DNA of 64,000 nt, taken from NCBI RefSeq assembly GCF_016432865.1, contig NC_067404.1:85250001-85314000 (forward strand), in the 5' to 3' direction. This document shows positions 45,353 through 57,060 of the stretch, piece after piece. The notes under the pieces were generated by a model. That model was not told the DNA's origin. It did not search any database and was given only the letters and a program-made list of their open reading frames with translations. This stretch comes from Antechinus flavipes (taxonomy: Eukaryota). Every line of letters starts with the position of its first letter. Within the stretch, counting starts at the first letter, position 1. The position numbers and the translations under genes were made by a program.

Positions 45353-46047
45353 CAGGTGAATGGTACTGGCCTCCACTTCCCTGACTGTCTCCAGCCTCCC
45401 CCCAAACCTCCTTCCCCTGCCCCTTTCAAGATCAAGCCTGGCATTCCTCAGTCTTTGGCCCTTTTAAGAACCAAAAAGGTGATCTCATTCCTCCAGGAGA
45501 TCTTCTAGTGATCTCACTCACTCTAGGGAATCTCCTTGATTCTAAGTGAGCTCATCCACTCTAGGTGATCTCATTCAAGGCTTTCATTCCATGTCAAAGA
45601 CAGAGACTTGGAACTACGGGGAAAACTGAGGAGGGACTTATGGTAGTCACAGGTCCCAAAAGTCCATGAAAACCAGTTCAAAGCCCCCACCCCCTTAAAG
45701 TTCAACACCAGTGAAACATGAGCTTGTCTTCCGCCCCCTTGTGGTTTCCCCGCAGAGCTCTGGTCCCACCGTGGCTTCAGCCTCCACAACCCTTACTCTT
45801 CCTCCTCCGGCTACCCTGCGCCAGCCGGTTTAACTCCGATCCATGCCCCGTGTTCAAATCTGGTCCCCCCTGCTCGTCGGCAAGCCCCGAGCACCCCCAC
45901 CTTCCTCCACGCTGGCTTCTACTCGCGTGGGGCAGAAAGGAGTCGCGGATCTGGATCGGATGGGTTCGCCACAGACTTTTCTTGGAATCTTCACCGGGCC
46001 CTCACTAAAGCAAGGAGATCCATTTATATCCCCCCATCCACTTGCCG

Positions 46048-46258
46048 GCGAGGTGGCACAGCGGATAGAACACCAGGCCGACCCGAGTTCAAAGTCAGCC
46101 TCGGACGTTTCCTCCCTGTGTGACCCTGGGCAGGTCACTCGACCCCGTTTACCTCAGTTTCCTCATCTGTCAGATGAGCTAGGGAAAGAAACGGCCAACC
46201 CTTCGGGTACCTCTGCCAGGAAAACCCTAAATGGGGTCGCAGCCACCCACAACGAAGG
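46048..46258 (+). mobile_element. MAR1-like CORE-SINE
   Basis: GGTGGCACAGCGGATAGA head, CCTCAGTTTCCTCATCTGT core, GCCAGGAAAACCC tail. Confidence 0.82.
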
Positions 46259-46289
46259 ATCGGCCGGTGCCCATCGGCTCTCCCGCTCA

Positions 46290-47040
46290 CACCCAGGGCC
46301 CTTCCCGACTCTTCCCTTCACCCTCAGGATTTCAGTGGCTCCCCTCCCCCCACCAACCCTGTCAGCTGAGAACCTCAGTCAGATTTCTCTTCCCATCACT
46401 CAGATCTCACCTCACTACTCAATAAACCCCAGTGACTCCATCACCTCCAGGATCAAATCAAGAGCCCCCTCGCCTTTTGCCATCGCCTCACTCCCCACTC
46501 AACTCCTCCCTTCTTCCCACGGCCTTTCCATTCTAACAACTTATTCCCACCCCCAACCGGTAACACTGGCCTCTTGGTTATTCCCGTACAAAGCCCCAGC
46601 AGCTTTCTAAAGCAGTCCCCCGGGCTTGGGTGGCTCCCCCTCCTCTCCCACCCCCTGGCTTCCCTGGCTGCCTTCAGATCTTGCCTCAAATAATGGCCTT
46701 TTCCCCCAGGAAGCTTTTCCTGATTTTCTTTAATTGTAAGGCCTTCCCTCTGTTAAGGAACTCCAAGTATCGCGTCATCTCCCCGTTAACCTTGCCAAGG
46801 GCACCGCCATCCTCCGGGGCGGGCAACTCCTCCCCCTCGCTCAGGCCGATTTTTGTCATCTCGACCTTCCCGGCCTCTCTACGTCCCCGGTCCTTCACTC
46901 ATCCACCCACAACTCTAATTCTGGCCCTCCTGCCCTCAACCTCCCAGGGTCGCTGTGAGAATCAACTGAGGTAACACTGGGAAAAGCACTTAGCACGGTG
47001 TCTGGCACACAGTAGCCATTTAGCAAGTACTTATTCCCTC
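46290..47040 (+). mobile_element. L2 LINE 3' region with MIR-like tail
   Basis: Pyrimidine-rich L2-like sequence (CCTCCAGGATCAAAT..., CTGGCCTCTTG) ending AAAGCACTTAGCACGGTGTCTGGCACACAGTAG. Confidence 0.65.
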
Positions 47041-47044
47041 TCCT

Positions 47045-47350
47045 CTTTCCTTGGTCAGTTATTCTGAGCAGACTCCAACTCTCTGGGACCCTAGTTGGTG
47101 TTTTCTTGGTAGAGATATTGGGCCATGTTGTTTTCGGCCATTTTCGGTTGGGTCTGAGTCTTTGTGATCCCATTTGGGGTTTTCCTGTGATGACGCTGGA
47201 GTGTTCTGCCATTTCTTTTCCCAACTTATTTCACAGATGAGGAAACTGAGGCAAACGGGGTCTGACTGACCAGGGTGATGCAGCCAGTAAATGTCTGAGG
47301 CGAGATTTGAAAACGGGAAGAGAAATCTTCCCGACTCCAGGTCCAGCACA
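47045..47350 (-). mobile_element. MAR1-like SINE(s), reverse orientation
   Basis: TTTGGGGTTTTC...GCCATTTCTTTTCCC...ACAGATGAGGAAACTGAGGCAAAC is the reverse complement of the SINE body. Confidence 0.8.
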
Positions 47351-47369
47351 TCGCCCGTTGCCCTGCCGC

Positions 47370-47900
47370 GCTGCCCATTCCCTCCCCTCTAGACTATCAC
47401 AATACTCTCCGCAGCAGACCGAGGCTAATCTCCCTGCCTTAAGCCTCCCCCCCACCCTCCCTCAGCTATCAAAGCAATTTGCCTAAAGCCCAGAGTTGCC
47501 ACTCTCCTGCCTATAGAGTTCTAGTGGCTCATTAAGCATCGCATATGAAGTCCACCATTTGCACTGCTTGGCTAATTTCCGGTCTTCCTATGGCTTCCCC
47601 CACTTCACAAACTCCTGATCTAGTAATAATCCGTCTCCTTGAAGTCCCCAGAACACGCTCCTTCGTCTCTCATCTCTGTCCCTTTGCCCTTGCACCAGAG
47701 GGTCCCTATTCCTGGAAAGCTCTGTCTCTCCTCTCCACTTCATTTTCTTGATTTTTTCCAAAAGTCAGCTGACATCACACCTGCACGATTCTCTTGCCCT
47801 CTCATCAGGGCCTCCCTTCTTGGGCCATCCCCTGTGCCACCTGCCTCTGTTTGTATCAGCCTTTCTGGGCGTTTTGCCCCCGTGCCCTCCGTGTTTAACT
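47370..47900 (+). mobile_element. L2 fragment
   Basis: CTAAAGCCCAG...CACTCTCCTGC...CAGTGGCTC-type L2 3' sequence. Confidence 0.5.
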
Positions 47901-48269
47901 GAGGCGTAACTGCCGCCCCGTTTCCAGTGGTCTTTCCTAGCGGGTCCTCAAAGAGCCAGGAGTGCCTACCCGGATTTCACAATTTCATAAAGTACCGATC
48001 GGTGGCGGAGTCGCCCTGCTAGTCCCATTCATGCATTCTCCAGTTCTAGTCAAACTGGCTGCTTCATTAACTTCCCAGACCATAGAATATTCCACCACCT
48101 ACCTCCAGTTCTTTGTGTCTGCTGTTCCCCCACGGCTGGACTATACTCCCTCTTTACCTTTACACCCTTTGAAAGCTCAAATTTCCTTAAAGACAATTCA
48201 GGTAGCAGCTAGGTTTCTTATCTTCGCAGCTGAATTTCTGAATCAGTTGTCTATAGACAGTCCCGCTGT

Positions 48270-49960
48270 TGAATAACTAGAACAAAGATCACTATTTAGA
48301 CCAGAGGGCAAGAATGAGCAAGCCAAAACGTGGCTGACCTTTAAAGAGCTCCCATTTAACTCCGAGAATGGAAAACTGGGGAAATGGAGAAAGGCGCAAG
48401 CGCCTAAAGGCAGAGTTCTACTTCCTCTGGAGGTGCTGAACTGGCATTCGGGAATTTCCCCAACAAGAAAGCCAAGAGCCTCCGAACTATCTCAAACGAA
48501 ATTATGCTGACACAGAGGGTGATGGGAAAAAGGCAACAAGAGTATTAGCCTATTGTTTTTTTAAAGCTCCTCTATGGGATCACAGAGAAGCAGCCTGACT
48601 CAGTGAACATAGCCACCGAGACCCGAGTTCAAGTCCCAGCTATGTGATCTGCACAAGTCGTAGCATGTCTCGGTGGACCATGTGGAAGAGGCCCTAGCAG
48701 AAGGAATACCCTCACTGAAATCCCAGACCGAACTACAGAATGGAGGATCGTGGCAGATCCGGGATGCTACCATCTCACAAAACAATGAGCGGTAGAGAAC
48801 GGGAAAACGAATTTACCCAAAACATGGCACACAAGTCTATGCTAAGCACGTGGAGATGGGAAGCCGCAGAGGACACAAGAGACAAACCGAAAGTGTCCCA
48901 GACGCTACCACGTCTATAACAAAGTATATTCACCAACCGTGGCGTAGAGTCCTCATCACATTCCCAAAGAACAATCTCTTGGGAAGTAATGGAGAAAAGG
49001 GTTCAAACGACAGGCCTTCAGAGGTGTTAAGGTAGACTTCTGGATACCAATCTTACACATATTATACAATAATACAACCGTGATGGCATAAAACAGAAAA
49101 GTTTTTGCACAAAGTCAAGGCAGCTCAGATTATAAGGGGAACTGGTAAGTGGGGGAATGATGCTCAGCAAGTAGTCTCAAAGGAATAGAGTCACATTTAT
49201 AAGAATAAATAAGAACCATTGCCCATTGAGAAACAGTCAAAGGATGCGCACAGGCAGTTCAAAAAAGGATGAAATCCAAACTTCAAATCACTAACTTGGA
49301 AAAGGCAAAATAAAACAACACCAAGTTCTAGTTCATGCCCATCAGATTGCCTAAAATGATCACCAAAAAAAAAGAGGAAATGACAATTGCTGGAAAGGAT
49401 GTGGGAAAATAGACATTTTGTGGCTCTGTCAGCGGAGCCGGGAACAGGTTCAGCCATTCTGGAAAACAATGTTGACTATTCTTCGAAAGTTAGAAAACCT
49501 TTGACCCAGGAATCCCATTTCCAGGTCTTTGTTCCAAAGGGATCAGAAAAAGAAGAAAAGGACCTATAGGTACAGAAATGTTTATAGCAGCTATCTCTGG
49601 TAACAATGAACAGGAAATTGAGAGGGAGGGAAATGGATCAACAAATTGTAGTATATGAATGTAGTTGCCCAATAGGTGCCATAAGAAATGACAGATGGGA
49701 TGACTCCAAGAGAAGTGATGAGGCTTGAAGGAATGGTGGAGGTGGGCAGAACCTGGGAACAATTTATACAAACACCTAACGTGACCCAGTAAAAGAACAC
49801 TGTAAAGACAGAGCTCTTGGAAAGGCACCAATGCTGACTCCAGGCAGGAAAGAAACATGACCCAGGTGGGAATCTGGCAGGGTGGGCCAGGCTTCTTGGC
49901 TTTTTCTGTTGTTTGTTTTACGGGAGTTGGAGGGAGAGAAAAGAAATGCTAGTTAATCTG
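48270..49960 (+). mobile_element. Old L1 (ORF2 3' half plus 3' UTR), interrupted by a reverse SINE at ~48590-48790
   Basis: Degenerate ORF2 C-terminal motifs (TGCTGGAAAGGATGTGGGAAAA = CW.GCGK; CAGCCATTCTGGAAAACAAT; TTTGACCCAG.AATCCCA). Confidence 0.75.
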
Positions 49961-49964
49961 CAAG

Positions 49965-50400
49965 ATTAAATGAATTAATTCATCATTAACAAATGAACAA
50001 TCTTATTAAAACCATTATATTATTATTTCCATAAGAAATTTTTATTTATTAATTTAGTTTATAATTAATGAACAAATTATGTTTATAATTTATTTTAACA
50101 TAACAGAATGTAATATATTATAGAATATATATTATTGAAATAATAAAATAATTATAAATATATAAATATAATTTGTAATGATATTTACAATGAATAGATT
50201 ACATCTAAAATACACGATAAATCAATAAATTAATAATTGGTAAAATGATTTATTTAAAATAACTTATCATGAATATAAATAAGAAATCACCATTAATTTA
50301 TTAAAAATAAAAATGACAAATAACTGTGAATTGATAAGGGATTGATACATTAATATTTTAACTAAAAATAAGTTTATATAGAATAAATTAACAAGAAACA
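49965..50400. repeat. Extremely AT-rich low-complexity block (~440 bp)
   Basis: Almost only A/T with no clear periodic unit; abuts the CpG island starting at ~50430. Confidence 0.85.
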
Positions 50401-50429
50401 GGTACTGAAGAAACAGACGAGCCCAGACT

Positions 50430-51330
50430 TCATTGGTCAGACTCACAGGTGGAGGCGAGCCACAGGCCGATGCATAGAGCGCTCGACTGCTCTGGCCTCC
50501 CTCTCACTCGGCAATCCACTTACACTATTTCGGGTTAGCGCATGCGCAACCACTTTATGCGCCCACCCCCTTTCCCAGGACCCTTAGAATATCTTTCTCC
50601 TCCTGTCACCTCCTTCCGCCAACCTCCTCCAGAAGGCCGTGCGACTGGAACCGAAAGAGGCCTGGGGGTCGCCTAAATCACCGTAGCCTCGGCTGCGCAG
50701 TCCGCCATCTTATCGCCTTAAACTTAGGTCTGGCATCGCGCGGTGCCTGCTGGGTCTTGTAGTTAGTTCGTCCCTCCGCTCACGGTCGGACTGTGGCCGC
50801 CCCGGAGACCTGACTTGCTTACCTTACCAGGCGGGCACTTCCGAGGAGGCTGAGAGGACTGGCTCGTTCGGGAGGAAAACCGCAGAGTCGGTCTCCTCGA
50901 GCACGTGCCGAGCAACTAGAGCGTGCAGAGAAGGACAACGCCTGCGCTGCCAGGCGGGAGCGGGAGCTCTCCCTCCGTCTTCCCACCCCCTCCATCCCCC
51001 GCCTTTGAACCTGCGCACAACTCCTCCCGCTTGGGGAGGTTCTGTGGGAGCCGCCGGAGCTCGAGAAAGAAAGCGAACGCTGCCCTTTTCTCATCGCGTG
51101 CCCGAACCCGGTAGCCGTGGGTACCTGGGATGGCCCGCCAGGGGCGCTCGAGCCTTTAGCCTCAAGGAGCTGCTCGGGCTCCTAGTTCGCGTATTTGGAC
51201 AGTTACTTTGTGCGCATGCTCGCTGTCCCACTCTAGACGCGGGCGAGTCTGAAAAAAAAAAAAAAAACCGCGTCCAAGCTTTGTGGCTAGGCTGCGCGTC
51301 ATGTCACGCCACGCCATTTCTACGCCACTC
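50430..51330. promoter_or_regulatory. CpG island with NRF1/YY1/E-box motifs (former GPKOW promoter)
   Basis: GCGCATGCGC 50538-50547, TGCGCATGCT 51211-51220, YY1-like AAGATGGCGG over the relic ATG, CACGTG 50902-50907, and high CpG density. Confidence 0.78.
50570..50708 (-). pseudogene. GPKOW: Disabled exon-1 relic of GPKOW (G-patch and KOW motifs protein) at its syntenic position
   Basis: Minus strand: ATG GCG GAC (MAD) at 50708 with an in-frame TAG at 50673-50675. The -1 frame gives PQASFGSSRTAFWRRLAEGGD (human, recalled: APISFGFTRTSARRRLADSGD). After another shift it reads EEKDILR (human EEKDFLK). Correct strand and order between CCDC120 and PLP2. Confidence 0.78.
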
Positions 51331-51519
51331 TTCCCTTGTGTTTCCTCCCTTCCTCCCTTCCCACTATGCTCTCGCGTTTGGGGAACGAGGGAACACCTGG
51401 GGGTCGCCCCTTTTCCAAGGGTCCTTGCTAAGGTGACGGATGAGTTCTGGAGACCAGAGTGCTAAATCGCAGGGCTTCTCCCCTTCAGAGCCCCCGACCT
51501 TGGGTGGGAAAGAAAATAG

Positions 51520-51710
51520 GTGCCCACTGTGTGCCAGGCATTGTGTTGAGTCTCGTTTGGCCCTCCCAAGAGCGCAGATAGCTGACAGCTATCACTGTCC
51601 CCATTTGACGGTTGAGGAAACAGGCAAACTGAGCTTTAGCGACAGCCCAGGACTCACACAATAAGTGTCAGAAGCCGGTTTTGAACTTCCTCAGTCCAGA
51701 TTCAGGAGGC
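51520..51710 (-). mobile_element. MIR/MAR-like SINE, reverse orientation
   Basis: CCCCATTTGACGGTTGAGGAAACAGG...GTGTCAGAAGCCGGTTTTGAAC. Confidence 0.65.
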
Positions 51711-51889
51711 AAGACCAGGCAAGCGAGGGTGGAGGCTTCAGCCCAGGGCGTGCTCCAGTGTGAACCACCTGGAGTCTGCTTTGTTTTACACCCCGGGAAA
51801 GCCAATCACTAAAATTCGGGGCTGGACAGTTTGGTCTGTTGCCTAGACTCTAAGAAAGTATTAAGAATGCAGATTAGACTTCAAAGTGC

Positions 51890-51890
<1 letters not shown>

Positions 51891-51941
<51 letters not shown>

Positions 51942-51959
51942 TTTTTTTTTTTTTTTTTT
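51891..51959. repeat. (CA)n microsatellite followed by poly-T
   Basis: Direct runs. Confidence 0.95.
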
Positions 51960-51999
51960 AAATCCTGACGGGAGGATTAGTAAACTTTTATCTGAACAC

Positions 52000-52570
52000 C
52001 TCTATCTCCTCTGGGCTGCTGAGCGCCTATGGGTGCAGTCTGAAGAAGTAGACACTGGGAGACCAAATTGCAACTTGGTGCAACCCTTTAAGTTCCCACT
52101 TTGTGGCAGGAAACACTAAAAGAGTCCTGCTCAGAAGAGCTGCTTTTGCAGGGTGGAGCTCCCAGCTCAGGTCTCTGGAGCTGTTGTGCTGACCCCACTG
52201 CCGGACGCCTCTGAAACCAGCCAGTCTAACAGCACCAGGCCCAGAAACCACTTTGGAATTGTCTTAGGAAGATTCTGAAGATCACCTGGCAAAATAAAGG
52301 AGCAGATGCTGGGGTCTCTTCTCAAAGGATATGGACCGTTTTCAGATAAAGAATCAAACTACTGCAGAGGGTGAAGTATGAGCGGGCCACGTGGTCTCCA
52401 TGCTATACACTTAGCTAAAAGACAATTTGAGGGAGAATTCACACAAGGCAGATGCTCACAAGGAAGACAGGAGAAGTGATACAAGGACACTGGCAAGGTC
52501 TCTCTGAAGAACTTTGGAAGTGATTTGGAACATGGGAGACACTGGCACTGGACCTCCCAGCAAGATGTGG
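52000..52570 (+). mobile_element. RTE LINE 3' fragment
   Basis: Degenerate KVYRAVVLT.LL.ACET and NCLRKILKITWQ.K motifs, homologous to the 31.2-31.5 kb RTE. Confidence 0.75.
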
Positions 52571-54450: not shown

Positions 54451-54599
54451 GAGATGCTGGATCTCTTATATTTAGCTGCTTTTTTCTTTACCAAAGAACA
54501 CGACCTCACAGACAGAAATGGCTAATGGGGAGCGGATCCCTAAGATGAGAAAATAGTAGGAAAATACAGAGTTGCTCTGGATGATTTTGTCCCCTTTTT

Positions 54600-55760
54600 C
54601 ATGTGAATTTAGGCTGACTGTCCTGGTACCTGGAAGATAATGAGAAATGGATGAGGTACCTCCCAATTGGAAAGAAAAGGCAAGCCTTCTGATCTTTCAG
54701 AACCGACCCGCAAGGATACAGGCCAGCGAGCTTGCTGTCTGTTGGTAGGAACGGATCACAAAAGACACGAACGGGGAACATCCTTCTTTAAAAGGGACGT
54801 GGGGATTTCAGAGAGCAAGACTGAAATGCCACTTTTTCACATGATTTCTGATCCAGTCATTGGCAGGAAGGCTGTAGATGGAGTTTGCTGACATTCCTGT
54901 ACGACGTTTGGGGCATAACTCCTATTTCTGGTAAGGAGAAAATGGAGAGGTACGGATTAGACAATAATCCCATTTTCAGGTGGCGGATTCAGAACTAACT
55001 GGCTGGTCAGAGACAAAAATGAATCCTTTAAGACTCGATGTCAGCTCGGTAGGAGGTCTTCCGGGAGTGCCGTAGGGCTCTTTGTCCAGCCATAGGCTGC
55101 TTCATCTTTTAATTTTTTTCTGTTGGGTGAACTGAACAAAACCATTGGAATACTCAGCAGATCTGGAGAAGACACGTCCTAAGAGGATGGTCGGAGTCCC
55201 CAGAGTTAGGGTAGAGGGCTGAGCTGAAGTCATGTGATAAAATGCGACTGGGGATGATTGGGAAGTTATCCGTATGGGTTCGAATAATCAACTTGGGGTA
55301 GATCCAGCTATGGGGGCGGCCCGATAAAGTTTCGGGGTCTCTATGAACCAGCAGGCATCGGCCAGTCAGCTCTACTTCGTCCCGGTCACGCCACATCTTT
55401 GGTATCGTCTCCGCCTTGGGGCAGTATAGTTTAAGAGGGGCTTTGGGGAACTGGAGGGTGTGTAACGGGGAAGGGCCTCAACTCTATGTCATATGGGGAT
55501 CAATTTAAGAAGCAGAGAATGTTTAGCCTGAAGGAGGAAAAACACTGAGGGAAGTGGGGGAGAGGTCCAGGAGAAGACTGAAAAGCTTGCTTCTACATCT
55601 GAAGGGTTACCCCGTAGAAAACAAAGTCAACTATTAGTTCTGTTCAGTCCCTCCTGAGAGCAGAACCCGGAGCAGTGAGTCACATCGCCAAGACACAAAC
55701 GGAGGCCTGGTGGGCAAGCCTTCCTGACCACTGGAGTGGTCCTCAAGTGGCCAGCCAAGT
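54600..55760 (+). mobile_element. CR1/L3 LINE 3' region
   Basis: AGAATGTTTAGCCTGAAGGAG...ACTGAGGG and the downstream 3' UTR pattern are typical of L3/CR1. Confidence 0.6.
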
Positions 55761-56449: not shown

Positions 56450-57060
56450 GACCCGGCAAAGTAAACTTCCCTAAGTTCAGGCCCAAGAACCCGCACTGCC
56501 GACTGGGGAGTGAGCCTCCCATCGCCCGGGCGGACGGCCGTTCCAGGGAGGAAACCGCAGCTGTCCCCATCCCTCAGGCCGGGCCGGCTCGGCCCATTCT
56601 GCCTTCCCAGACTCCCACCTCGGGAGGGAGCGTGCGTTTCCCCTCCCCTGGGCCAGGAGGGCCTCCCGCCCGTTCCGAGTCCCCTCCATATAGGGAGACA
56701 GGAGCGGCGGCCCCGCCCTCACCACTCCCTCCCTGCCTCTCGCCCAGAGGTGGTGATTCACGCTGGAGCGGGGCAGGGGTGGGGTGGACAGCAGCCTCAC
56801 CTACTTCCTACTGGGCGGCGGGGGACCCAGGCTGTCGGGGATCGCCCTTGCGGCTGGAGCTGTGGGGCAGCGTCCAGCGCTTCCCAGGCAGGGAGCTCCA
56901 GGAAGGAGGGCCTCTGAAGCGGCGCCTGCCTCTCTCCCTGTGGCCCCAGGATGGCGGACTCGGAGCGCAGCGCGGCCCCGGACTGTTCGGCCGCCTGCAA
57001 GGCGTTCTCCCGAACCCGCAAGGGGATTTTACTCCTGGTCGAGACGGTGAGTGCCCCTGG
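56450..57060 (+). promoter_or_regulatory. CpG island, PLP2 promoter and exon 1
   Basis: GC boxes (CCCCGCCC, GGGGCAGGGG) and CpG density upstream of ATG 56951. Confidence 0.72.

What the first reader, a model, noticed from the sequence alone, without database searches (positions are those of the whole stretch)
50570..50708. In-situ GPKOW relic: a normally conserved splicing-factor gene reduced to a broken first exon
Seen: on the minus strand AAG ATG GCG GAC starts MAD but stops at codon 12 (TAG 50673-50675). One base out of frame it reads PQASFGSSRTAFWRRLAEGGD, and after a second shift EEKDILR. Established: human GPKOW begins MADSKEG...APISFGFTRTSARRRLADSGD...EEKDFLK, lies on the minus strand between WDR45 and MAGIX/PLP2, and is the yeast Spp2 orthologue (G-patch cofactor of Prp2/DHX16). 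Inference: this is a unitary pseudogene at the ancestral locus, so function has probably moved (retrocopy, translocation or Y copy) or been lost. The ORF track misses it because no long ORF survives.
Basis: partly seen in the sequence, partly recalled or inferred. Interest (0 to 1): 0.9.

Follow-up and report, generated by a model that had tools for sequence, protein, structure and literature searches.

The report
Dead parent of marsupial GPKOW retrogene
This is the decayed first exon and surviving promoter of the X-linked splicing-factor gene GPKOW in a dasyurid marsupial; the gene was not lost, because all marsupials checked use an intronless autosomal retrocopy instead, a rare but already known kind of gene replacement.

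Summary
The window is the Antechinus flavipes X chromosome (PLP2 exons match 100%).

- **The relic.** The minus strand 50708-50575 is a decayed GPKOW exon 1. It keeps the ancestral ATG and has an in-frame TAG at codon 12, a 1-nt deletion and a 10-nt deletion.
- **Homology.** It is the best match in the window to residues 20-37 of human GPKOW (PDB 7dvq_y). It aligns to the first 48 codons of marsupial GPKOW (z 12-13). It lies where intact GPKOW lies in the cuckoo, head-to-head with PLP2.
- **Not an artefact.** Sarcophilus and Sminthopsis carry the same lesions, so they are not assembly errors and predate the split of these three dasyurid lineages. The koala has deleted the whole segment.
- **Nothing else survives.** No other GPKOW exon, and no WDR45, PRAF2 or PDZ exon, was found in the window.
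- **The function moved.** Antechinus, Sminthopsis and Monodelphis each carry an intact intronless GPKOW on a 450-660 Mb chromosome (dN/dS 0.17). Platypus has a 10-kb multi-exon gene next to WDR45.

This is therefore the dead parent of a marsupial "orphan" retrogene, not a unitary pseudogene. The relic keeps a CpG island and an ancestral ACTACA..CCCAGCA element, and that element is tandemly repeated upstream of the retrogene. It is a new member of a known kind. Scan note s1-211363 flagged the same interval on this window.

The parts
50575..50709 (-). Relic of the coding part of GPKOW exon 1, homologous to codons 1-48 of marsupial GPKOW. It is 11 nt shorter than the retrogene equivalent.
   Evidence: Local DNA alignment to L006 10000-10145, score 63 against shuffles 26.8 +/- 2.8; four-sequence alignment A7; protein alignment A8; tblastn.
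50706..50708 (-). Ancestral start codon (ATG GCG GAC = MAD).
   Evidence: It aligns with the ATG of the retrogene and is identical in Sarcophilus and Sminthopsis.
50673..50675 (-). In-frame TAG at codon 12 of the original frame. It aligns to an Ala codon of the retrogene.
   Evidence: The same TAG is present in all three dasyurids.
50660..50680 (-). Site of a net 1-nt deletion, the first frameshift. The exact base depends on the alignment; it is near 50668/50667.
   Evidence: Alignment A7 and coordinates. The gap is shared by the three dasyurid relics.
50609..50620 (-). Junction of a 10-nt deletion, the second frameshift, at about 50614/50613. It removes part of the AEGREGP codons.
   Evidence: Alignment A7 and coordinates. 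The deletion is shared by the three dasyurid relics.
50582..50602 (-). EEKDILR segment in the third frame. The Sarcophilus and Sminthopsis relics read EEKDFLR, as does the Monodelphis retrogene.
50747..50763 (-). ACTACAAGACCCAGCAG, an element that looks like a ZNF143/Staf binding site, 39-55 nt upstream of the ATG. It is the only copy in the window.
   Evidence: expected by chance 0.02. It sits at the same position in L001 and L002. Platypus intact GPKOW has ACTACAAATCCCAGCA 44-59 nt upstream of its ATG. The motif name comes from my recollection, not from a tool.
50451..51300 (.). CpG island (GC 0.61, CpG observed/expected 0.90) covering the relic exon and its former promoter.
   Evidence: It is retained in Sarcophilus (o/e 0.87) and Sminthopsis (o/e 0.91) and absent in the koala.
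50538..50547 (-). GCGCATGCGC palindrome (NRF1-like) just downstream of the relic exon, invariant in the three dasyurids.
   Evidence: The motif name comes from my recollection.
48594..52256 (.). Segment holding the relic, the CpG island, an AT-rich stretch and an L1-like fragment. It is present in dasyurids and missing in the koala.
   Evidence: In the koala, the flanking matches abut within 17 bp (L004 5369/5386).
45400..50574 (.). Interval where GPKOW exons 2 onward, WDR45 and PRAF2 would be expected. No exon of these genes is recognisable.
   Evidence: Pfam scans of all open pieces of 30 aa or more; motif scan; tblastn with GPKOW proteins; platypus GPKOW and WDR45 exon pieces.
56951..57049 (+). 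PLP2 exon 1, the divergent neighbour 6.2 kb from the relic ATG.
   Evidence: 100% match to A. flavipes PLP2, P0001.

Best explanation
The stretch is what remains of the original intron-containing X-linked GPKOW gene of marsupials.

1. Before American and Australasian marsupials separated, a GPKOW mRNA was reverse-transcribed and inserted into an autosome. I assume a single event.
2. That intronless copy became the working gene.
3. The X-linked parent then became dispensable. Its body, together with the neighbouring WDR45 and PRAF2 positions, disappeared from the interval between the CCDC120-like gene and PLP2.
4. In dasyurids only exon 1 and its CpG-island promoter survive. The exon carries a nonsense codon and two frameshifting deletions that are shared by Antechinus, Sarcophilus and Sminthopsis.

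Shown here: homology to GPKOW exon 1, the syntenic position, the shared lesions, the absence of other exons, and an intact intronless autosomal GPKOW under purifying selection in this species.

Inferred: the order of events, a single retroposition, and the selective reason. The usual proposal for that reason is escape from meiotic X silencing.
For: Species: PLP2 exons match A. flavipes PLP2 at 100%.

Homology. The relic also shares the marsupial-specific residues RLAEG and EEKDFLR with the retrogenes.

Position:
- In the cuckoo, GPKOW (430 aa; G-patch_2, KOW, GPKOW_C) is on the minus strand with its 5' end 8.2 kb upstream of PLP2 on the plus strand.
- In platypus, GPKOW spans 10.4 kb and is followed by a 358-aa PROPPIN gene that I read as WDR45.

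Not an artefact: the 10 kb upstream of PLP2 is collinear with Sarcophilus (88% identity) and Sminthopsis (85%). The ATG, the TAG and both deletions are the same in all three.

No other exons. Positive controls worked. The Pfam method found the PET and LIM domains of PRICKLE3. Platypus GPKOW exon pieces hit the Antechinus retrogene with E down to 3e-19.

Retrogene:
- A. flavipes XP_051845586.1 (424 aa) is encoded by a contiguous 1275-bp ORF on the 636.7-Mb record CM028219.1.
- Sminthopsis has a 1275-bp ORF. In Monodelphis the called gene spans 1311 bp for 436 aa.
- At least eight platypus exons map collinearly onto the uninterrupted ORF.
- The domains are complete: GPKOW_C 3e-41, G-patch_2 2e-20, KOW 4e-13.
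- dN/dS is 0.165 between Antechinus and Sminthopsis.
- The devil's Ensembl GPKOW is listed on chromosome 3 with a 2.4-kb span (PMC6089428, supplementary table S1).
Against: - A single retroposition before the marsupial radiation is assumed. Flank synteny between the Monodelphis and dasyurid retrogenes could not be checked because no Monodelphis DNA was returned.
- The koala lacks the relic. Retention in dasyurids rather than insertion there rests on position, strand and outgroup synteny, not on a marsupial outgroup sequence.
- The X-to-autosome assignment rests on three things: contig sizes (83-90 Mb against 430-670 Mb), the devil table, and a published statement that this region lies on the opossum X (PMC3472169). 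I saw no chromosome names.
- No expression data were available.
Confidence: 0.9

Rival explanations
1. The relic exon and its CpG island are not merely decaying. They have been kept as a working promoter or first exon of a non-coding transcript, or as a regulatory element for neighbours such as PLP2. This is compatible with the main explanation and adds a present-day function.
For: - CpG observed/expected is 0.87-0.91 in three dasyurids, although the coding lesions predate the split of these three lineages.
- The 200-bp block 50595-50793 is 94-95% identical among the three species. Most blocks of the interval score 80-92% (alignments A6 and A9).
- The ancestral ACTACA..CCCAGCA element, the GCGCATGCGC palindrome and a CACGTG box are invariant.
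Against: - Several other blocks of the interval are equally conserved, and unmethylated islands mutate slowly anyway.
- The ETS-like site and the strong splice donors upstream are not conserved.
- The koala deleted the whole segment.
- No Rfam family matches the region.
- No transcript data were available.
Confidence: 0.3
2. The frame breaks are sequencing or assembly errors, or the interval is a misjoin. An intact multi-exon GPKOW would then really sit here.
For: The region is GC-rich, which can cause indel errors.
Against: - The same TAG and the same two deletions occur in independent assemblies of three species.
- The interval is collinear across Antechinus, Sarcophilus, Sminthopsis and, apart from one deletion, the koala.
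- The window has no N.
- No G-patch, KOW or GPKOW_C exon is present in 64 kb.
- No gene is called within 10 kb upstream of PLP2 in seven species: six marsupials and the echidna.
Confidence: 0.01
3. The stretch is a fragment of a processed (retro)copy, or a duplicated 5' piece of GPKOW, that happened to insert next to PLP2 in dasyurids. It would not be the in-situ parent.
For: The koala lacks the 3.7-kb segment with clean flanks. Taken alone, that could mean an insertion in dasyurids.
Against: - Homology to the mRNA stops about 17 nt short of the expected exon 1/exon 2 boundary and does not run into exon 2.
- The piece includes a CpG island and the promoter element found upstream of platypus GPKOW.
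- Its place and strand are exactly those of intact GPKOW in the cuckoo.
Confidence: 0.04
4. The resemblance to GPKOW arose by chance in a GC-rich island.
For: Each protein match is short (18 and 7 residues). A PDB phmmer search with the 41-aa piece found nothing at E up to 10.
Against: - Both fragments have their best hit in the whole window here, adjacent and in order.
- The DNA alignment to marsupial GPKOW has z 12-13.
- The 5' leader also aligns to the retrogene locus.
- The syntenic position agrees.
Confidence: 0.005

Closest known systems
Orphan retrogenes and their extinct parents (Ciomborowska et al. 2013, PMC3548309; Carelli et al. 2016, PMC4772013; examples RNF113A, MARS2, TRMT12)
   Same: An intronless retrocopy takes over and the intron-containing parent is pseudogenised or lost. 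The retrogene sits in a CpG island, which Carelli et al. report for nine of their ten orphan families.
   Different: GPKOW does not occur in the main text of that paper. No paper in the library links GPKOW to retroposition or marsupial relocation. Here a recognisable piece of the parent, with its promoter island, still survives at the ancestral site.
Out-of-X retrogene export in therian mammals (the general pattern reviewed in PMC5470649 and PMC4772013)
   Same: An X-linked housekeeping gene gives rise to an autosomal retrocopy.
   Different: In the usual case parent and copy coexist and the copy is testis-biased. Here the parent is gone, so the copy must supply the function in all tissues. 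That last point is an inference.
Human GPKOW / yeast Spp2 (G-patch cofactor of DHX16/Prp2; PDB 7dvq chain y; PMC4266926)
   Same: The relic matches residues 20-37 and 44-50 of the human protein. The A. flavipes retrogene has the full G-patch, KOW and GPKOW_C architecture.
   Different: The relic encodes nothing usable. Marsupial proteins are shorter (415-443 aa against 476-508 aa).
Unitary pseudogene
   Same: A disabled gene at the ancestral locus, with intact orthologues in other lineages.
   Different: A unitary pseudogene has no functional copy in the same genome. This genome has one.

Membership tests
GPKOW gene (functional member) | Conserved N-terminal exon 1 motifs (P-V/I-S-F-G/S-F-S/T-R ... 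R-R-L ... E-E-K-D-F-L-x-x-V-E-G-R-E-L) | tested here: met
   The relic matches these motifs in two shifted frames, but a TAG and two frameshifts interrupt it.
GPKOW gene (functional member) | G-patch, two KOW motifs and the GPKOW C-terminal domain encoded at the locus | tested here: not met
   None was found in the 64-kb window by Pfam scans, tblastn with bird, marsupial, monotreme and eutherian GPKOW or platypus exon pieces. The positive controls worked.
Unitary pseudogene | No functional copy of the gene elsewhere in the same genome | tested here: not met
   A. flavipes XP_051845586.1 is an intact 424-aa ORF on CM028219.1.
Extinct parent of an orphan retrogene | An intronless, intact copy elsewhere whose exons are collinear with the multi-exon gene of outgroups | tested here: met
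   L007 10001-11275 translates directly to the protein. Platypus exons spread over 10.4 kb map in order onto it.
Extinct parent of an orphan retrogene | The disabled remnant lies at the ancestral syntenic position | tested here: met
   It lies between a CUPID-domain gene (consistent with CCDC120) and PLP2. Place and strand are the same as for cuckoo GPKOW.
Extinct parent of an orphan retrogene | The retrogene is under purifying selection | tested here: met
   dN/dS is 0.165 and dS is 0.12 between Antechinus and Sminthopsis, whose ORFs have equal length. Intact proteins were returned from nine marsupial genera.
Extinct parent of an orphan retrogene | The retrogene is broadly expressed and replaces the parental function | not testable with these tools
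   No expression data were available.
Processed pseudogene fragment | Homology to the mRNA runs across exon junctions; no parental promoter; non-syntenic site | tested here: not met
   Homology ends close to the exon 1 boundary. A CpG island and the ancestral upstream element are present. The site is syntenic.
CpG-island promoter with a ZNF143/Staf-type site | Meets CpG-island criteria and carries an ACTACA..CCCAGCA element near the start site | tested here: inconclusive
   The island criteria are met. The motif is present and positionally conserved with platypus. The identity of the motif rests on my recollection, and binding and activity were not tested.

The most novel reading that the evidence does not exclude
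The retrocopy took part of the parental promoter with it. The ACTACA..CCCAGCA element lies 39-55 nt upstream of the ATG in the relic and 44-59 nt upstream in platypus GPKOW. If parental transcripts started upstream of that element, it would have been carried into the retrocopy's leader. It would then have been tandemly amplified (6 copies in Antechinus, 4 in Sminthopsis) to give the retrogene a housekeeping promoter. Meanwhile the emptied parental island stayed unmethylated and conserved in dasyurids as a promoter without a gene.
Probability: 0.3. Interest if true: 0.65.

Novelty: new member of a known kind. Interest (0 to 1): 0.5.

Why it matters
GPKOW (yeast Spp2) is a spliceosome cofactor reported as essential for pre-mRNA splicing in vitro (PMC4266926).

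- **A rare kind of replacement.** The evidence points to marsupials running GPKOW from a retrocopy while the original X-linked gene has decayed. That adds an essential splicing factor to the short list of orphan retrogenes. Carelli et al. found ten such families.
- **A datable fossil.** The parent's first exon and promoter still lie at the ancestral site.
- **A practical warning.** The case explains an apparent gene loss in synteny-based annotation. Absence at the syntenic locus does not mean loss of function.
- **A testable mechanism.** The tandem array of the parental promoter element upstream of the retrogene offers a concrete case for the long-standing question of how promoterless retrocopies acquire broad expression.

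Tried and rejected
- **PDB search with the relic.** A phmmer search with the 41-aa relic piece found nothing at E up to 10. The match is too short for a database-wide search, so I verified the human fragment instead.
- **Motif scans.** Regex scans for G-patch, KOW, PROPPIN, PRA1 and PDZ motifs across all six frames gave only noise.
- **Pfam scans.** Scans of every open piece of 30 aa or more in 45-57 kb on both strands gave only noise above E 0.01. The control shows the method finds PET and LIM domains but misses the MARVEL domain of PLP2. It is therefore not fully sensitive, which is why I added reference-protein searches.
- **Literature.** Searches for a GPKOW retrogene or a marsupial relocation found nothing. 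The one useful item was the devil supplementary table.
- **Rfam.** Nothing reached threshold on 45-57 kb.
- **Promoter features first noticed by eye.** An ETS-like CGGAAGTG site and strong splice donors upstream of the ATG are not conserved in Sarcophilus or Sminthopsis, so I dropped them.
- **Conservation as proof of function.** The relic block is among the best conserved, but not uniquely so. I do not count it as proof.
- **Missing DNA.** No DNA was returned for Monodelphis, Vombatus or Macrotis. The relic could not be dated beyond the dasyurids and the koala.
- **Marginal hits.** Hits of platypus WDR45-region pieces to the window and the koala fall on both strands of a repeated element. I judged them to be interspersed repeats.

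Full report
**1. The observation**

- ATG GCG GAC starts at 50708. That frame gives MADCAAEATVI and stops at TAG 50675-50673.
- The neighbouring frame reads ..GDPQASFGSSRTAFWRRLAEGGDRRRKIF*.
- The third frame reads QEEKDILRVLGKGVGA*.
- The window has no N.

In a six-frame search of the whole window, that fragment's best hit is 50658-50605 minus (11/18 identical, E 8.5e-4; the next hit has E 0.9). EEKDFLK has its best hit in the whole window directly downstream, at 50602-50582. The resemblance is therefore real and in the right order.

**2. Species and neighbours**

PLP2 exon 2 retrieves PLP2 of Antechinus flavipes at 100% identity. The other dasyurids score 94-96%. Exons 1-3 of that protein map to the window at 100%. 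PLP2 starts at 56951 on the plus strand.

PRICKLE3 (PET and LIM domains) lies on the minus strand at 59.4-63.4 kb. A CUPID-domain gene consistent with CCDC120 lies on the plus strand at about 41.5 kb. Earlier scan notes place KCND1 upstream in the window and CACNA1F beyond its end.

The relic lies in the 11.5-kb gap between the CCDC120-like gene and PLP2, 6.2 kb from the PLP2 ATG, on the opposite strand.

**3. Nothing else of GPKOW, WDR45, PRAF2 or MAGIX is present**

- I scanned every open piece of 30 aa or more in 45-57 kb, on both strands, against Pfam. There was no G-patch, KOW, WD40/PROPPIN, PRA1, PDZ or reverse-transcriptase match.
- The same method finds the PET and LIM domains of PRICKLE3 but not the MARVEL domain of PLP2. 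I therefore added searches with reference proteins.
- Full-length GPKOW proteins from a bird, five marsupials, platypus and armadillo match the window only at the exon 1 segment.
- Exon pieces of the platypus GPKOW and WDR45 genes give no credible hit in the window. The same GPKOW pieces hit the Antechinus retrogene with E down to 3e-19.
- This agrees with scan note s1-211363.

**4. Ancestral arrangement**

In the cuckoo, a 430-aa gene with G-patch_2, KOW and GPKOW_C domains lies on the minus strand, with its 5' end 8.2 kb upstream of PLP2 on the plus strand. No gene lies between them. Its exon 1 encodes MAADGG..PVSFSFSRKAERRKVL..DTDFLTAVEGRELLR.

In platypus, GPKOW spans 10.4 kb. A 358-aa PROPPIN gene, which I read as WDR45, follows it 2.4 kb downstream on the same strand.

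The relic therefore lies where GPKOW exon 1 is expected, on the expected strand. The lack of MAGIX may be ancestral rather than a loss (inference).

**5. Not an artefact, and old**

- The 10 kb upstream of PLP2 is collinear with Sarcophilus (88% identity) and Sminthopsis (85%).
- All three species share the ATG, the TAG at codon 12 and the same frame breaks.
- Aligned to the Sminthopsis retrogene, the relics share a 1-nt and a 10-nt deletion. That makes a net deficit of 11 nt over 146 nt, with alignment score 63 against 26.8 +/- 2.8 for shuffles.
- The lesions therefore predate the split of these three dasyurid lineages.
- The koala lacks window 48594-52256 entirely. Its flanking matches abut within 17 bp, and it has neither the relic nor the island.
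- No gene is called within 10 kb upstream of PLP2 in Sarcophilus, Sminthopsis, Vombatus, Macrotis, Monodelphis, Phascolarctos or Tachyglossus.

**6. Where the function went**

I used cuckoo exon 1 to obtain a full-length bird GPKOW. That protein retrieved named marsupial GPKOW proteins of 415-443 aa, apart from a 581-aa koala model, most of them on contigs of 430-670 Mb. PLP2 sits on contigs of 78-90 Mb.

- A. flavipes XP_051845586.1 (424 aa) is encoded by one contiguous 1275-bp ORF on the 636.7-Mb record CM028219.1.
- Sminthopsis has the same structure. In Monodelphis the called gene spans 1311 bp for 436 aa.
- Platypus exons map in order onto the uninterrupted ORF.
- The protein has GPKOW_C (3e-41), G-patch_2 (2e-20) and KOW (4e-13) domains.
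- dN/dS between Antechinus and Sminthopsis is 0.165.
- A published table lists the devil's Ensembl GPKOW on chromosome 3 with a span of 2.4 kb (PMC6089428, table S1).
- The relic shares the marsupial-specific residues RLAEG and EEKDFLR with these retrogenes.

GPKOW in marsupials is thus an orphan retrogene in the sense of PMC4772013, and the finding is its extinct parent. I found no paper that says so.

**7. The promoter survives**

An 850-bp CpG island (50451-51300, observed/expected 0.90) covers the relic. It is retained in the other two dasyurids.

ACTACAAGACCCAGCAG occurs once in the window, at 50763-50747 minus, 39-55 nt upstream of the ATG (expected by chance 0.02). It sits at the same place in Sarcophilus and Sminthopsis. 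Platypus GPKOW has ACTACAAATCCCAGCA 44-59 nt upstream of its ATG. From memory, this resembles the ZNF143/Staf site.

The retrogene loci carry 6 copies (Antechinus) and 4 copies (Sminthopsis) of this element in a 54-bp tandem array just upstream of the ORF. The relic's leader aligns to L007 9513-9592 with 62/78 identity. Leader-to-upstream alignments have z 11 (L007) and 16 (L006).

Two ideas follow, and both are inferences:
- The island is still active. The block 50595-50793 is 94-95% identical among the three species, but a few other blocks are equally conserved.
- The retrocopy carried the parental element with it and later amplified it.

**8. Limits**

- I could not obtain DNA of the interval from Monodelphis, the bilby or the wombat.
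- I could not test flank synteny of the retrogene across orders.
- No expression or methylation data were available.

Noticed in passing
window 45400-50570; platypus L008 22727-27817: WDR45 and PRAF2 are also absent from their expected place next to GPKOW. In platypus the PROPPIN gene I read as WDR45 lies 2.4 kb downstream of GPKOW. Where these two genes are in marsupials, or whether they exist there at all, was not resolved.
   Followed up: partly
L007 9480-9911 and L006 9485-9872: A tandem array (54-bp unit) of the ACTACAAG.CCCAGCAG element lies directly upstream of the intronless GPKOW ORF: 6 copies in Antechinus and 4 in Sminthopsis. The same element occurs singly upstream of the relic ATG.
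   Followed up: partly
window 48594-52256 against koala L004 5369-5386: The koala lacks this 3.7-kb segment, with clean flanks. Among the marsupials whose DNA was obtained, the relic and island are so far seen only in dasyurids.
   Followed up: yes
window 49387-49569 (+) and 50000-50400: An open piece resembles the C-terminal part of L1 ORF2 (my reading, not tested). Next to it is a stretch of only 10-17% GC with a 20-bp AT-rich tandem repeat at 50119-50173. Both lie just downstream of the relic, where intron 1 would have begun.
   Followed up: no
window 54472-54671: This 200-bp block between the relic and PLP2 is 94-96% identical among the three dasyurids, as conserved as the PLP2 promoter block 56654-56851. 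Its nature is unknown.
   Followed up: no
window 50661-50673 and 51396-51408 (minus strand): The 13-mer GGCGACCCCCAGG occurs twice within the CpG island. One copy lies inside the relic exon.
   Followed up: no
proteins P0123 (koala GPKOW, 581 aa) and P0002 (devil PLP2, 137 aa): These annotation models deviate from their relatives. The koala GPKOW has a long unrelated N-terminal extension. The devil PLP2 aligns over only 59% of the Antechinus protein. Both are probably gene-model errors.
   Followed up: no
cuckoo L005 19086-26086: In the cuckoo, the gene downstream of PLP2 is an FtsJ-domain gene on the plus strand, not PRICKLE3. The neighbourhood on that side differs from mammals.
   Followed up: no
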